Source: Zygophlyctis sp. KS116
Lineage: Eukaryota; Fungi; Chytridiomycota
Direction: 5' to 3'
NCBI GenBank assembly: GCA_054661495.1
Contig: BAAFSQ010000195.1
Coordinates: 1-18,441, forward strand
DNA length: 18,441 nucleotides
This document shows positions 1-4,235 of this stretch, piece by piece (positions within the stretch are counted from its first letter, which is position 1; each line of letters opens with the position of its first letter). Made by a program: the position numbers and the translations under genes. The notes below the pieces were generated by a model. That model did no database searches and was not told where the DNA came from. It saw only the letters and a program-made list of their open reading frames with translations.

Positions 1-679
1 CAAATCTCTGTTCAGCGTTTCTAGCCGCATTTATATTTCCTCTCAATTGATGACGAACAGGTGCGTGCCTGTTTAGTTGAATCGCTGGAGGAGGTAGCTG
101 AAGTTGGGGAAGGGCAGCAACTCGATGATCAGGAGGATTATGTCGATTAGCAGATCTAAGCCTTGCAGCGACAAAGGGATCAGGGGGGGCTTCCTGCTCA
201 TCAAAAGCATTACTACGAGGTCTTTGATGAATTCTAGGGGGTGCTTCCTGCTCATCAAAAGCATTACTACGAGGTCTTTGATGAATTCTAGGTGGTGCTT
301 CCTGCTCATCAAAAGCATTACTACGAGGTCTTTGATGAATTCTAGGAAGTGGTGCATCTTCCTCATCAAAAGCATAGCTTCTTCTTATTTCTGGAAAAGC
401 ATTATCATTTTCTGCCAAGTGATTACCAAAAGGTGACCTGACATTCATTCTAGCAACAGAATCATCCTCATCAAAAGCATTACTTCTTTGTATGCCTGGG
501 AAATCTAACTGATCTTCTTCATGAAGGAGTCTGTTTTGCTGAAGGCGCTGAGGAGATGCGGCTGCTCTATGAGGTAGGAAATTATGAGGAGGTTTTGGCG
601 GACTCGGCTTTCCTAATGGGAACTTAAATGTCATGGCAGAAGCTACAGCAATAATAAGCGAAAATCTTAATCCAATCAT
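1..679 (-). CDS. Secreted repeat-containing protein (family member A), 3'-partial, >=226 aa
   Basis: Hand translation from the ATG at 679 (context aaaaATG) is stop-free to the window edge, which is why the ORF track missed it. It reads MIGLRFSLIIAVASA|MTFKFPLGKPSPPKPP...IQRSNAFDEDD...IRRSYAFDEED...(PRIHQRPRSNAFDEQEAP)x3...NAARNAEQRF. The signal-peptide-like N-terminus ends in ASA, as in the paralog at 1582. Confidence 0.88.
   Translation of the reverse strand, partial: MIGLRFSLIIAVASAMTFKFPLGKPSPPKPPHNFLPHRAAASPQRLQQNRLLHEEDQLDFPGIQRSNAFDEDDSVARMNVRSPFGNHLAENDNAFPEIRRSYAFDEEDAPLPRIHQRPRSNAFDEQEAPPRIHQRPRSNAFDEQEAPPRIHQRPRSNAFDEQEAPPDPFVAARLRSANRHNPPDHRVAALPQLQLPPPAIQLNRHAPVRHQLRGNINAARNAEQRF
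189..350. repeat. 54-bp coding tandem repeat, 3 near-identical units (18 aa PRIHQRPRSNAFDEQEAP on the minus strand)
   Basis: gcttcctgctcatcaaaagcattactacgaggtctttgatgaattctagg starts at 189, 243 and 297. Degenerate cores cctcatcaaaagcat occur near 361 and 466, and a variant occurs in the next gene near 1288. Confidence 0.97.
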
Positions 680-909: not shown

Positions 910-1091
910 ATCTAATCGATGTGATTGTACATCGAAATCAAGTGTTTCATTAATACACAATTCCTCAAAAGATATTTTGAAAGTTCAAACAGAAGGTTTA
1001 ATTGAAATTTCTATAATATTCCTGTTATAAAACTTGATCTTTGCTTTGTTAATCTAACTGCTTTCGGACACGATGTATTTAAGCCACTGGA
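910..1091. repeat. ~180-bp direct repeat, copy 1 (3' flank plus terminal codons PVA* of the secreted-family gene unit)
   Basis: Aligns with small indels to 1792-1971, from atctaatcgatg through cgatgtatttaagccactgga. Confidence 0.95.
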
Positions 1092-1279
1092 GCAATGGCT
1101 TCAAACCCCGCCATACATACCCGGGACTTGAGGAATTGGATTCATTATTATGCAGATCGATCGGACTCTGGACCGCGCTCTCTTTTACTGATGATTGCTC
1201 AAATATTCACATTTTGACTATCGTTTAAAATCACTTTGGAATTTATTCTATTAAGCTCGTTCGCCAATTGTAAGACTGA
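1079..1279 (-). pseudogene. Decayed former 3' coding half of secreted protein B
   Basis: The ATG-1582 frame continues past TAG-1280 as SVLQLANELNRINSKVILNDSQNVNI*AIISKRERGPESDRSA***IQFLKSRVCMAGFEAIAPVA*. It ends at 1079 in the same PVA* as paralog C. The span 1079-1582 is 504 nt, i.e. 168 codons. Confidence 0.65.
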
Positions 1280-1582
1280 CTATTCATCCTCATCAAATGC
1301 ATTGTTTCTTTTTATCTCGTATTTTTGTCTAAGATTGTCTTCATGCGCTTCTAGTTGAGCTTGCTTCAGTTTTTTATATTGAGCAGCAGCTTGGCGATAT
1401 TCGCTGACTTTAAGACCATTATTTTCTTTTGGAATCGCTATTACATCATCCTGTGGGGCAAATTGAACATCTCTTACAGTGTTTTTTGCGGCACCAGATG
1501 GCTTTAGAATGGAACCAAAGTTCAATTTCATTGGCATTGCAGAAGCAATTGCGATCATAATCCAAAAAATAAATCCTTTCAT
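1280..1582 (-). CDS. Small secreted protein (family member B), 100 aa, with SILK/RVxF-like motifs and C-terminal IKRNNAFDEDE
   Basis: Signal-peptide-like MKGFIFWIMIAIASA followed by MPMKLNF (paralog C has FPVKLNF). aaaATG context; no intron needed. Confidence 0.85.
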   Translation of the reverse strand: MKGFIFWIMIAIASAMPMKLNFGSILKPSGAAKNTVRDVQFAPQDDVIAIPKENNGLKVSEYRQAAAQYKKLKQAQLEAHEDNLRQKYEIKRNNAFDEDE

Positions 1583-1791
1583 TTTAAAATTCTAACATAT
1601 GAAACGTAGAGAACGGCACATTTAAACGGCAATGCGGTACAAGATCAAACCGATCAATTCTTGATGGATTAACTTAACGTCCATCCTAGTAAACTTAATA
1701 GCATCATGGCTCCATTTACTACTTTGGAACATAGAATTATAAACCCCGCCCGATTCCTGACTTTTACAAATCACAACGGTGTCAATGCCTC

Positions 1792-1971
1792 ATCTAATCG
1801 ATGCTGATTGTACATCGGAAATCAAGGGTTTCATTAATAAACAATTCCTCAAAAGATATTTTTGAAAGTCAAACAGAAGGTTTAATTGAAATTTCTATAA
1901 GATTCCTGTTATAAAACTTTATCTTTGTTAAATCTAATTGCTTTAAGACACGATGTATTTAAGCCACTGGA
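1792..1971. repeat. ~180-bp direct repeat, copy 2
   Basis: Homologous to 910-1091 at an offset of about 880 bp. It includes the stop codon and last codons of gene C. Confidence 0.95.
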
Positions 1972-2507
1972 TTAATACTTCTCTGAATTGATTTCTGAGA
2001 TATCCCAGCTTGTCCATTTATCGCTTGTTTTGCATCATATATTGCCTTATGTGCATCAGATATAACTGCACGAATTTCATCTTCATTTGACGCTGAACTT
2101 TCTTTATGTTTTAATTTAGAAACTCCTCTTTCGGCTTTTTCCTGTAGTATTGCTAGATGTTTCATAGCTTCCTTCAGGGCATCATCAAGATCATCTTCAG
2201 CAGCTCTTTGGGCTAAAAATGAATTATCATTTGCTGCAATTGCAATTTCTTCTTTGGGGGCATAAGGGATTAATCTTACTTCTGTATTTGGAGAAAATCT
2301 AACATGCGTTTGGGTGTTTCTTTCAACTCTAGATGATGATTTTAGAATGGGTTGCAGATTTGCTTCCTCATAGGGTGCGTTTGGTGAGGCAGGCGGCTCT
2401 TCCAGAGATGATCTTCCAAATTTCGATTTCAGCGATTTCATAAAGTTCAACTTCACTGGAAATGCAGAAGTGATTGCAATCAATAGAAAAATCATAAATT
2501 TTTTCAT
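1959..2507 (-). CDS. Secreted protein (family member C), 182 aa, with a PILK...HVRF...VRLI motif cassette and a helical C-terminal part
   Basis: Signal-peptide-like MKKFMIFLLIAITSA; aaaaaATG context. The N-terminus and motif block align with member B. Confidence 0.88.
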   Translation of the reverse strand: MKKFMIFLLIAITSAFPVKLNFMKSLKSKFGRSSLEEPPASPNAPYEEANLQPILKSSSRVERNTQTHVRFSPNTEVRLIPYAPKEEIAIAANDNSFLAQRAAEDDLDDALKEAMKHLAILQEKAERGVSKLKHKESSASNEDEIRAVISDAHKAIYDAKQAINGQAGISQKSIQRSINPVA

Positions 2508-2698: not shown

Positions 2699-3151
2699 TT
2701 ATTCGGACTGAAAATTCAACTTGAAATCACTTTCTTCTTTTGTGAGTTTACTGCTCTTGGCTTTCCACAACTTCTTATTTTTAGTAGCTCCATTTGCGGT
2801 ACGTTGTGCTAATTCCTCGGTCTCCTTTTCCCACTGTTTAGTCAGATCAGGATCTCCTTTTAGGCATCTCCACCCCATTAAGCAAATCACAATTAACATT
2901 ATAAATCCCAAAACACCACCAAGAACAATTAAGAAGTCTTTAAGTACAAAGAATGCAGCATCCTTTGAAGGTGCAGGAGTTGCAGTTGTTTTGGGTGGTA
3001 AGTTCTCCGGACGATTGGGCAGATAAGGATTTGCAGTTGGGACAACTTGGCCCAATAATGCAGAAGGTAATTGAATTCCCGTTGGCACAGGGATTTGGGC
3101 ATTGATTACAATACATAAAATGGGTAGAATTAAAAGAGACTTGAGATTCAT
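2699..3151 (-). CDS. Single-pass type I membrane protein of unknown function, 150 aa
   Basis: Signal peptide MNLKSLLILPILCIVINA, Pro/Thr-rich ectodomain, hydrophobic segment FLIVLGGVLGFIMLIVICLMGW, and a basic cytoplasmic tail. aaaaATG context. Confidence 0.82.
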   Translation of the reverse strand: MNLKSLLILPILCIVINAQIPVPTGIQLPSALLGQVVPTANPYLPNRPENLPPKTTATPAPSKDAAFFVLKDFLIVLGGVLGFIMLIVICLMGWRCLKGDPDLTKQWEKETEELAQRTANGATKNKKLWKAKSSKLTKEESDFKLNFQSE

Positions 3152-3237: not shown

Positions 3238-4235
3238 TTAAGCTCGCAAGAATTTGGATCGTTCATAAACAGCATTTTGTCCTTTACTGATTAAAAGATC
3301 TGAAAACATTTGGCTACTTGGATTACGAACAATATTGTCGTGATCATGGGTAAAAACTAGAGCCTGACTATCCAAGTCCAATTCATTAATATTAAATCCA
3401 GCCAAAAGAATTTTCTTGCCCAATTTAAAAGATCCTGACGCCATGAATAAAGCCTTCATAATATCATCATGATCCCATAAATCAAACTCTTTAGCAAGAT
3501 CATTATAACTTTTCAAGAATTGATTAATATGATTTTTATCAACTTCTGAAATCATGCTTTGGTCAAGATCTTTTTTAGTAATATTAGAAATTAAGATTTC
3601 CCCTGTAATGTCCGAACCCTTACTCACCAACGACGTTTGAGCAGTGTATTCATCAGTAGCTAGAGTATTTTGATCATAATTTGCATTGGTATCATTTTGA
3701 TTATCAACATTTTCTTGGTCCGCAACGATTGCTTCTTTTTCAACATTTGGTAAATACTTTTTTATAGCATAATCCCTCCAAGATTGCCATGTATGATGAG
3801 GAAAACTTTTTGCGAGGTCAATATACAATTTATTCCCAGTGGGACATTCTTTTGAAGATTTCAACGCTTGTCTTAATATAGCATGATCTTTGCTAGTGAA
3901 TAATGTTTTTTCCTTTGATTTTGGTAAAGACTCGACAGTGTTCAGTCTAAAAGAGTCCGAATCCAACAACTTATTAGCCTATAAATAAGAGGCATATAAG
4001 ATTACATCGATACATGCCTGAATATACTCTGTAGAAAAGAACTCTCCTTGAATGGTCGATGTCTCTGGATGCGCAAGGCACATATCAGCAGCTCGCGTTT
4101 GGGATATTAAGCCCCCACTATTCTATCTGATTAAGTAATGCACAATACAGTTATAATTTTAGAAAGTTCCTTTTTGCCTTTGGAGCTTTTAATATAAAAG
4201 GACATTGCATTATTATCTCTTTCAAATAACGACAT
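3238..4235 (-). CDS. RAP1: Telomeric Rap1 / TERF2IP homolog (BRCT + single Myb + RCT), 3 exons, ~314 aa
   Basis: Exons 4235-4149, 4122-4006 and 3978-3238; introns 4123-4148 (26 nt) and 3979-4005 (27 nt). BRCT region LFERDNNAMSFYIK...GEFFSTEYIQACID...LLDSDSFRL resembles human RAP1 LFVRDDGSSMSFYVR...FISTQYILDCV...LEAYRL. Myb domain TGNKLY...HHTWQSWRD; RCT end KGQNAVYERSKFL. Confidence 0.9.

What the first reader, a model, noticed from the sequence alone, without database searches (positions are those of the whole stretch)
1430..2351. Conserved SILK + RVxF + PhiPhi PP1-docking cassette in secreted proteins B and C
Seen: B has GSILKPSGAAKNTVRDVQFAPQDDVIAIP (1430-1516) and C has QPILKSSSRVERNTQTHVRFSPNTEVRLIP (2265-2354). 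In otherwise divergent proteins the retained residues are ILK, VxF and V-x-x-IP at nearly the same spacing. Known: PP1 regulators use SILK upstream of RVxF and a hydrophobic PhiPhi pair a few residues downstream. HVRFSPNTEVRLI resembles ICP34.5 RVRFSPHVRVRHL and DP71L HVRFAAAVEVW. Inference: these are secreted PP1-targeting subunits or inhibitors. Caveats: RDVQF has a disfavoured acidic residue, and PILK is a variant of SILK.
Basis: partly seen in the sequence, partly recalled or inferred. Interest (0 to 1): 0.8.

Follow-up and report, generated by a model that had tools for sequence, protein, structure and literature searches.

The report
Secreted proteins carrying PP1-docking cassette
Two neighbouring genes of an uncultured freshwater fungus encode small, secreted-looking, largely floppy proteins whose only shared internal block copies, in order and spacing, the short handles that cell proteins use to grip protein phosphatase 1; they may be tools for tampering with another cell's signalling, but no binding or delivery has been tested.

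Summary
B (window 1280-1582, minus) and C (1959-2507, minus) have the quoted residues at the quoted coordinates. The block is a homologous module. A profile built from B, C and one paralogue finds it only in three further leader-bearing ORFs of this 12.7-Mb genome. In 1.84 billion representative proteins it occurs only in strain variants of the same genes.

The cassette reads S-I-L-K/R, 11-12 residues, basic-x-V-x-F, 5 residues, V/I-x-x-I-P. This order and spacing fit the SILK, RVxF and PhiPhi[xF] pockets of PP1. In the Inhibitor-3:PP1 crystal, 9 residues bridge the first two pockets. AlphaFold places the cassette in low-confidence coil ahead of helices. The mature parts of B and C have no cysteine.

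Caveats:
- C lacks the basic residue of RVxF.
- Two paralogous cassettes carry V-to-A or F-to-V changes.
- About one chance match to the composite pattern is expected per proteome.
- PP1 is cytosolic, so a delivery step is needed.
- Nothing has been tested experimentally.

My verdict is a plausible (about 0.4) PP1-mimicry effector family. It is lineage-restricted and evolves by tandem duplication. The scan had already reported the same cassette on another contig of this genome (note s1-560706).

The parts
1959..2507 (-). Gene C, 182 aa plus stop: leader, disordered N-terminal half with the cassette, C-terminal helical hairpin
   Evidence: ORF. (AF2: coil with pLDDT 46-57 to aa 90; helices 91-134 and 139-178 with pLDDT 72-86). 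(a metatranscriptome contig lies on 2262-2468). (98% identical strain variant P0001).
2463..2507 (-). C leader, aa 1-15, signal-peptide-like; candidate cleavage after T-S-A
   Evidence: uncharged run of 13 aa and small residues at -3/-1; variant strains have a different 5' end that still encodes a leader of the same kind.
2340..2351 (-). C SILK-like motif PILK (aa 53-56)
   Evidence: P replaces G/S, so it fails the strict SILK pattern.
2295..2306 (-). C RVxF-like motif HVRF (aa 68-71)
   Evidence: It has the same four residues as the DP71L short form KHVRF but lacks the K/R.
2265..2279 (-). C PhiPhi[xF]-like VRLIP (aa 77-81)
   Evidence: V/I at +6 and I at +9 after F are invariant in class across the 6 cassettes. 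The mapping to PhiPhi[xF] is inferred.
1280..1582 (-). Gene B, 100 aa plus stop: leader, cassette in coil, single long helix, C-terminal R-x-x-A-F-D-E module
   Evidence: (AF2: coil to aa 58; helix 59-99 with pLDDT 83-91). (strain variant P0004). No RNA contig lay on it.
1538..1582 (-). B leader, aa 1-15; candidate cleavage after A-S-A
1502..1513 (-). B SILK motif (aa 24-27), canonical
   Evidence: matches the SILK pattern.
1460..1474 (-). B RVxF-like RDVQF (aa 37-41)
   Evidence: matches the RVxF pattern. The acidic D next to V is unfavourable (my knowledge of the stricter consensus).
1430..1444 (-). B PhiPhi[xF]-like VIAIP (aa 47-51)
1283..1312 (-). B C-terminal K-R-N-N-A-F-D-E-D-E module, shared with gene A and other paralogues
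2..679 (-). Gene A (runs off the window start): same leader, no PP1-like cassette, five R-x-x-A-F-D-E repeats
   Evidence: RNA-library contigs lie on 263-412.
934..1096 (.). Copy 1 of a direct repeat (3' flank of B), including a relic of C's last codons and stop
   Evidence: D2 and D4: 89-93% identity, spacing 880-884 nt..
1818..1976 (.). Copy 2 of the direct repeat (3' end and flank of C). It defines an ~884-bp tandem unit that holds B.

Best explanation
B and C belong to a small, lineage-restricted family of secreted, cysteine-free, largely disordered modular proteins. The proposed mechanism has three steps:
1. The leader sends the protein out of the fungal cell.
2. The protein reaches the cytosol or nucleus of another eukaryotic cell (host or prey) by an unknown route.
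3. The cassette wraps around a PP1-type catalytic subunit. S-I-L-K/R sits in the SILK pocket. The mildly basic 11-12-residue linker lies over the acidic patch between the pockets. Basic-x-V-x-F sits in the RVxF groove. V/I-x-x-I adds a short strand at the PhiPhi site, with the invariant Ile in the pocket that normally takes the Phe of PhiPhi[xF].

The helices that follow in B and C, or the R-x-x-A-F-D-E modules, would then redirect, block or sequester the phosphatase.

What is shown: the motifs, their order and spacing, their conservation, the leader, predicted disorder and lineage restriction. What is inferred: secretion, delivery, binding and the outcome.
For: The cassette is a homologous module found only in leader-bearing ORFs.

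The predicted PP1-contact columns are the best conserved: identity 0.76 against 0.48, permutation p about 0.0007, post hoc. A basic residue sits two positions before V in 5 of 6 cassettes.

In strain variants, changes fall on the x and flanking positions, while I-L-K/R, V, F and I-P stay fixed. The A at the V position in one cassette is V in two other strains.

The SILK-to-RVxF gap of 11-12 residues exceeds the 9 residues that span the two pockets in the I3:PP1 crystal. That structure has an acidic PP1 surface under the linker.

RVxF followed by PhiPhi[xF] is used by about 90% of solved holoenzymes.

The x position is T or S in 4 of 6 cassettes, as in more than half of known regulators.

AF2 places the cassette in low-confidence coil ahead of confident helices.

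Leaders have 11-16 uncharged residues and small residues at -3/-1. The mature parts of B and C contain no Cys.

Precedents exist. Phytophthora effector Pi04314 binds host PP1c through KVTF. ICP34.5 and DP71L use RVRF and KHVRF.

The family shows tandem duplication, a possible presence/absence difference for B, and module shuffling, all typical of effector families.
Against: No experiment has been done.

One chance match to the composite pattern is expected per proteome of this size. All copies descend from one ancestor, so this is effectively a single event found in a very large scan.

C lacks the K/R of RVxF. C112b has V at the F position in both strains. C112a cassette 2 has A at the V position in this genome. 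The C904 copy has no SILK. V and F are the residues whose loss cuts I3 binding about 200-fold.

Several conserved columns are not explained by PP1 contacts: N-T in the linker, P after the Ile, and a hydrophobic residue before SILK.

The same profile picks up WD40 and LRR repeats. V-x-F-S-P...hydrophobic is therefore also an ordinary beta-hairpin signature.

A signal peptide puts the protein in the wrong compartment for PP1 unless it is taken up by another cell. The organism's lifestyle and host are unknown to me.
Confidence: 0.4

Rival explanations
1. The block is a lineage-specific module of secreted proteins with a function unrelated to PP1. It could be a beta-hairpin that binds another partner, a wall or adhesion element, or a sorting or processing signal. 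Its likeness to SILK, RVxF and PhiPhi would then be coincidence.
For: The composite pattern is expected about once per proteome by chance. WD40 and LRR repeats score next in the profile search, so the V-x-F...hydrophobic part is a common hairpin signature. The only fully invariant residues are I-P, and N-T is conserved without a PP1 explanation. Two cassettes carry substitutions of the kind used to kill RVxF binding. Secreted proteins do not normally meet PP1.
Against: Three separate PP1 motifs occur in the right order with workable spacings. The cassette lies in predicted coil, not in a fold. There are no cysteines, which is unusual for small proteins that act outside cells. A basic residue at -2 and T/S at x add to the match.
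Confidence: 0.4
2. The proteins are not secreted. The N-terminal hydrophobic stretch is an uncleaved membrane anchor with the rest of the protein facing the fungus's own cytosol. They would then be endogenous membrane-tethered PP1 regulators.
For: The 15 residues after the hydrophobic stretch carry a net charge of +2 to +4 in the leader-1 group. By the positive-inside rule, this could keep the C-terminal side cytosolic. It removes the need for delivery into another cell. Some PP1 regulators, such as PPP1R15, are membrane-associated through their N-termini (my knowledge).
Against: The uncharged run is only 11-16 residues, short for a membrane span. It is followed by A-x-A-type cleavage sites and preceded by K/R. 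Three different leaders carry the same modules. The family is absent from all other organisms searched, unlike core PP1 regulators. The genome has its own ordinary Ypi1.
Confidence: 0.12
3. B and/or C are not real protein-coding genes but chance ORFs in a duplicated intergenic region.
For: No RNA contig lay on B. B sits in an ~884-bp duplicated unit that one variant contig lacks. All five strain differences in B change the amino acid.
Against: The ORFs stay open and 97-98% identical in other samples. A profile finds the same module in six ORFs on four contigs. A contig from an RNA library covers C's leader and cassette. Leaders and promoter-like elements are shared.
Confidence: 0.05

Closest known systems
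Inhibitor-3 / Ypi1 (PPP1R11)
   Same: It is a small disordered protein. A SILK-type motif lies a few residues (9) N-terminal to RVxF, with a basic linker over the acidic patch of PP1. The residues after the aromatic are also alike: S/T, D/N, T, then V. This can be seen in the organism's own Ypi1.
   Different: There is no Pfam PPI_Ypi1 match for B or C. There is no CCC motif, and B and C have no cysteine at all. I3 has no signal peptide and is conserved across eukaryotes, whereas this family is confined to one lineage. I3 turns towards the active site after RVxF instead of using a PhiPhi strand.
PPP1R15 (GADD34/CReP) and viral mimics ICP34.5 and DP71L
   Same: V-R-F-S-P is identical between C and the PP1-binding ICP34.5 peptide. 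H-V-R-F is identical to the DP71L short form. In these proteins RVxF is followed by alternating hydrophobic residues, and they are pathogen-encoded surrogates of a PP1 regulatory subunit.
   Different: There is no PP1c_bdg match. No eIF2alpha-recruiting motif was recognised. The spacing after F differs. The known proteins have no SILK and no secretion signal.
Phytophthora infestans RXLR effector Pi04314
   Same: It is secreted by a filamentous parasite through a signal peptide and acts inside the host. It binds host PP1c through K-V-T-F, the same core as in the C904 and C112 cassettes, and so acts as a surrogate regulatory subunit.
   Different: Pi04314 has an RXLR uptake motif and a WY-type fold and relies on a single RVxF. 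The family here has no RXLR and no detectable fold around the motif. It carries a three-part cassette, sometimes twice in one protein.
Inhibitor-2 (PPP1R2 / Glc8)
   Same: It has SILK, then an RVxF-type motif, then a long helix in an otherwise disordered protein (discussion). B and C likewise have a long helix after the cassette.
   Different: In I-2 the gap from SILK to RVxF is about 27 residues, and the RVxF is degenerate (SQKW). Its inhibitory helix carries H-Y-x-E, which I did not find here. I-2 has no leader. Pfam gave no match.

Membership tests
PP1-interacting proteins defined by docking motifs (RIPPOs/PIPs) | RVxF motif, pattern [RK]-x(0,1)-[VIL]-{P}-[FW] (pattern from my knowledge of ELM; consensus also) | tested here: inconclusive
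   The pattern is met in B, C904a and C112a cassette 1, and in cassette 2 of two other strains. It is not met in C (T-H before V), in C112a cassette 2 of this genome (A at the V position) or in C112b (V at the F position).
PP1-interacting proteins defined by docking motifs (RIPPOs/PIPs) | SILK motif [GS]-[IV]-L-[KR], N-terminal to RVxF | tested here: met
   It is canonical in B, in both C112a cassettes and in C112b. C has PILK and C904a has none. It always lies 11-12 residues before V, against 9 in the I3:PP1 crystal.
PP1-interacting proteins defined by docking motifs (RIPPOs/PIPs) | PhiPhi or PhiPhi[xF] a few residues after RVxF | tested here: inconclusive
   V/I at +6 and I at +9 are present in all 6 cassettes. 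The authors state that this motif cannot be identified reliably from sequence alone, and here Ile replaces Phe.
PP1-interacting proteins defined by docking motifs (RIPPOs/PIPs) | Motifs lie in an intrinsically disordered region | tested here: met
   Single-sequence AF2 gives coil with pLDDT about 46-57 over the cassettes of C and B. This is weak evidence because no deep alignment exists.
PP1-interacting proteins defined by docking motifs (RIPPOs/PIPs) | Physical, motif-dependent binding to PP1 catalytic subunit | not testable with these tools
   No complex prediction or binding assay was available. Fused or multi-chain inputs are not accepted by the fold tool.
PP1-interacting proteins defined by docking motifs (RIPPOs/PIPs) | Shares a compartment with PP1 (cytosol or nucleus) | tested here: not met
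   Every cassette-bearing ORF starts with a signal-peptide-like leader. Contact with PP1 therefore needs uptake by another cell, which is untested.
PPP1R15 / ICP34.5 / DP71L (Pfam PP1c_bdg, PF10488) | Profile match to the PP1c-binding region | tested here: not met
   hmmscan of B and C gave no match at E<=1. The genome scan also found none, but its controls did not ring either.
Inhibitor-3 / Ypi1 (Pfam PF07491) | Profile match and the CCC motif that covers the active site | tested here: not met
   B and C give no Pfam match and have no cysteine in their mature parts. The genome's own Ypi1 lies elsewhere, on contig C27.
Translocated (cytoplasmic) effectors of filamentous parasites | Signal peptide, lineage-restricted fast-evolving tandem family, host-cell uptake | tested here: inconclusive
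   The leader, lineage restriction, and tandem duplication with a possible presence/absence difference are met. Uptake, infection-specific expression and the parasitic lifestyle of the organism could not be tested.

The most novel reading that the evidence does not exclude
An early-branching aquatic fungus deploys a modular set of secreted, disordered proteins built from mimics of cytosolic phospho-signalling motifs. One module is a complete SILK-RVxF-PhiPhi dock for host PP1. Another is a hydrophobic-x-R-x-x-A-F-D-E module resembling a basophilic-kinase pseudosubstrate. The modules are shuffled behind shared leaders. I found no report of a true-fungal effector family that hijacks host PP1, and I found none that uses the full three-pocket dock as a portable cassette.
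Probability: 0.3. Interest if true: 0.75.

Novelty: new member of a known kind. Interest (0 to 1): 0.5.

Why it matters
Little is known about how aquatic chytrid-like fungi manipulate the cells they live on; the paper searches here returned no report of a true-fungal or chytrid effector that uses PP1-docking motifs. PP1 is one of the most conserved eukaryotic enzymes, so a docking mimic would work in almost any host. If the cassette binds PP1, it gives a compact, testable handle (about 28 residues) on host-signalling takeover by these fungi. It would also be a natural example of the SILK, RVxF and PhiPhi motifs packaged as one mobile module, and a sequence signature for finding such effectors in metagenomes. 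If it does not bind, the case is a useful warning that short-motif look-alikes arise in conserved hairpin-like blocks.

Tried and rejected
- Pfam scan of B, C and neighbours found nothing relevant for B or C.
- Word search with C alone and with a family alignment returned only strain variants.
- An exhaustive profile search of 1.84 billion representatives returned five same-lineage proteins. The next hits were WD40 and LRR repeat proteins, which I rejected as hairpin look-alikes after reading them.
- A profile search of PDB sequences gave only E>1 noise.
- ESM Atlas gave no usable hit.
- Foldseek on the C model gave only generic coiled coils at E>=0.8.
- PP1c_bdg was searched in the genome with no hit, but the controls were silent, so this is uninformative.
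- I considered the C904b ORF (G-I-L-R followed by R-V-F-R-I) as another cassette and rejected it. It fails the RVxF pattern and the profile.
- I considered a peptide-precursor reading (the cassette as a released bioactive peptide) and set it aside because no dibasic processing sites flank it.
- Strain variation was too sparse for a selection test.
- The spliced model of the C904 paralogue was not joined or searched as one protein. Its exons were read separately.
- The organism's taxonomy and lifestyle could not be established with these tools.

Full report
WHAT IS THERE

The window is eukaryotic, AT-rich DNA (GC about 0.35) from a 12.7-Mb, 1175-contig assembly. Its neighbours are ordinary nuclear genes: a Rap1-type Myb protein, mismatch-repair, flavocytochrome and esterase pieces. 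The same sequence is present in contigs of freshwater, lake and estuary metagenomes from 16 studies.

Three small genes lie in tandem at the left end, all on the minus strand:
- A: 2-679, running off the window
- B: 1280-1582
- C: 1959-2507

CHECK OF THE OBSERVATION

The quoted peptides and coordinates are exact.
- B has SILK at aa 24-27, RDVQF at 37-41 and VIAIP at 47-51.
- C has PILK at 53-56, HVRF at 68-71 and VRLIP at 77-81.

The K-to-V gap is 11 residues in B and 12 in C. The F-to-V gap is 5 residues in both. BLASTP aligns only the first 27 residues of B and C, so the two proteins are indeed otherwise divergent.

IT IS A FAMILY MODULE

Searching the genome with B and C found paralogues on contigs C904, C112, C263, C18 and C70.

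A profile of six cassettes (A1) hits only seven places in the genome: the six cassettes and a partial copy on C263. To avoid circularity I rebuilt the profile from B, C and the C904 copy only. It still finds C263 (E 7e-6) and two of the three C112 cassettes (E 6e-5 and 5e-4), and nothing else at E<=10.

One C112 protein carries the cassette twice.

A leader profile shows that seven genes share the B/C-type leader. The C112 pair uses another leader.

Modules are shuffled between genes:
- leader + cassette + R-x-x-A-F-D-E: B, and the C904 gene after a 30-nt intron
- leader + cassette + helical hairpin: C
- leader + A-F-D-E modules only: A, C18, C70

Outside this lineage nothing was found. In 1.84 billion representative proteins the profile finds only five strain variants. 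The next hits are WD40 and LRR repeat proteins, which I judge to be false positives. The word search gives the same picture.

FIT TO PP1 DOCKING

The consensus is S-I-L-K/R, 11-12 residues (net basic, with a conserved N-T), basic-x-V-x-F, S/A-x-x-x-x, V/I-x-x-I-P.

Published structures give three yardsticks.
- In I3:PP1, S-L-T-I-K occupies the SILK pocket and K-V-E-W the RVxF pocket, with nine residues between K and V. These residues lie over an acidic PP1 surface. A gap of 11-12 is therefore sufficient.
- The SILK definition has been widened experimentally to G/S-I/V-L-K.
- RVxF is followed in about 90% of solved holoenzymes by PhiPhi or PhiPhi[xF], a short strand plus a Phe in a hydrophobic pocket.

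I infer that V/I at +6 and the invariant Ile at +9 play the PhiPhi[xF] roles. This would explain why Ile is invariant.

The DP71L short form has K-H-V-R-F. An ICP34.5 peptide containing R-V-R-F-S-P-H-V bound PPP1CA in a peptide assay. The core of Pi04314 is K-V-T-F, the same core as in the C904 and C112 cassettes.

Columns that the PP1 model predicts as contacts are more conserved than the rest: identity 0.76 against 0.48, class identity 0.85 against 0.59, permutation p about 0.0007. That test is post hoc, because the motifs were noticed from the conserved residues.

CONTEXT OF THE MOTIFS

Single-sequence AlphaFold models put both cassettes in low-confidence coil. In C a helical hairpin follows (aa 91-178, pLDDT 72-86). 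In B one long helix follows (aa 59-99, pLDDT 83-91). Foldseek finds only generic coiled coils.

The leaders have 11-16 uncharged residues, a K/R before them in most, and small residues at -3/-1. The mature parts of B, C, A and four of the five paralogues examined have no cysteine (C112b has two), and all are 60-72% polar or disorder-prone. By general experience with effectors, this suits proteins that act inside cells better than proteins that act in the extracellular space.

In other strains C has a different 5' end that still encodes a leader of the same type.

A contig from a metatranscriptome library covers C's leader and cassette, and two more cover A's repeats. None covers B. DNA carry-over in that library cannot be excluded.

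WHAT WEAKENS THE PP1 READING

- B passes both patterns but has Asp next to V.
- C112b has V at the F position in both strains. C112a cassette 2 has A at the V position in this genome, though V in two other strains. V and F are the positions whose replacement lowers I3 affinity about 200-fold.
- The composite pattern is expected about 1.2 times per 3 million random residues. All copies are paralogous, so the occurrence itself is one event in a very large scan.
- The WD40 and LRR hits show that V-x-F-S-P followed by hydrophobic residues is also a common hairpin signature.
- PP1 is cytosolic or nuclear, so a secreted protein can meet it only inside another cell. I could not establish the organism's lifestyle.
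- There is no homology to PPP1R15, I3 or I2 families. The genome has its own ordinary Ypi1.

EVOLUTION OF THE LOCUS

Direct repeats at 934-1096 and 1818-1976 (89-93% identity) define an ~884-bp tandem unit that contains B. The copy downstream of B holds a relic of C's last codons and stop.

A contig from another sample (L013) runs from the C orthologue straight into the A orthologue across this repeat. Either B is absent in that strain or the assembler collapsed the repeat.

All five strain differences in B are non-synonymous, and none touches a motif position: Q44H, K52R and three in the C-terminal half. The four differences in C's variant lie outside the cassette. The numbers are too small for a selection test.

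VERDICT

The best single explanation is a secreted PP1-docking mimic, at about 0.4. About equal weight goes to an unrelated lineage-specific module. Smaller weight goes to an uncleaved anchor with a cytosolic PP1-regulator role.

The closest architectures are Inhibitor-3 (SILK close to RVxF) and, by role, Pi04314 and ICP34.5/DP71L. Membership of those protein families was tested and not met. The claim is one of working alike, not of descent.

The scan already holds a follow-up report on the C112 pair of this genome with the same reading (note s1-560706). This window adds three further family members, the leader group, the leave-group-out test, the geometric comparison with I3 and the locus dynamics.

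The spliced C904 model was read exon by exon only. The joined protein was not built or searched.

Noticed in passing
window 2-679 (-), B aa 91-100 (1283-1312), and loci L005, L006, L007: A second shared module, hydrophobic-x-R-x-x-A-F-D-E, occurs five times in gene A and once at the C-terminus of B and of the C18, C70 and C904 paralogues. It has Arg at -3, Ala at the would-be phospho-acceptor position and Phe at +1, so it looks like a basophilic-kinase pseudosubstrate. PP1 also has a recently described 'AF' pocket. Neither idea was tested.
   Followed up: partly
window 934-1096 and 1818-1976; locus L013: An ~884-bp tandem unit contains gene B, with a relic of C's 3' end downstream of B. One contig from another sample joins the C orthologue directly to the A orthologue. 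This is either a presence/absence difference for B or an assembly collapse.
   Followed up: partly
L005:1405-1434 (+): A likely 30-nt in-frame micro-intron (GT...AG, with a stop inside) in the C904 paralogue links its cassette exon to an exon with A-F-D-E modules. This agrees with the micro-introns another reader noted in this window.
   Followed up: partly
window aa 16-23 of A, B and C (e.g. 1514-1537, 2439-2462): Directly after the predicted cleavage site the leader-1 genes share a short motif, roughly hydrophobic-P/T-x-K-L/F-N/P-F. It may be a second sorting or uptake signal. In B and C its K-L-N-F also matches the loose RVxF pattern.
   Followed up: no
window 1583-1732, 680-829; L006:1234-1383: The upstream regions of A, B and C18 share short elements: a GAT-GGTTTGATC-like box, a TTTAAA box and GTTTCA just before the start codon. 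This hints at co-regulation of the family.
   Followed up: no
L002:1480-2106 (-), aa 19-39 of the C112 two-cassette protein: The N-terminal block after the leader is nearly invariant in three strains and ends in L-I-A-I-P. It is preceded by I-K-Y-F seven residues upstream and may be a third, degenerate half-cassette.
   Followed up: no
window 2497-2507 and loci L012, L013: In other strains the first codons of C are replaced by a different sequence with an upstream ATG. This gives a longer leader of the same kind, so the 5' end is structurally variable while a leader is kept.
   Followed up: yes
L003:1423-1659 (-): The C263 paralogue keeps the leader and the K-N-T...H-V-L-F part of the cassette but has no SILK and no V-x-x-I-P. 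It looks like a decaying or diverged copy. I describe it only and propose no repair.
   Followed up: partly
window 2699-3151 (-) and 3238-3969 (-): Next to the cluster lie a 150-aa single-pass membrane protein with its own leader and no family match, and a Rap1-type Myb / Rap1_C protein.
   Followed up: no
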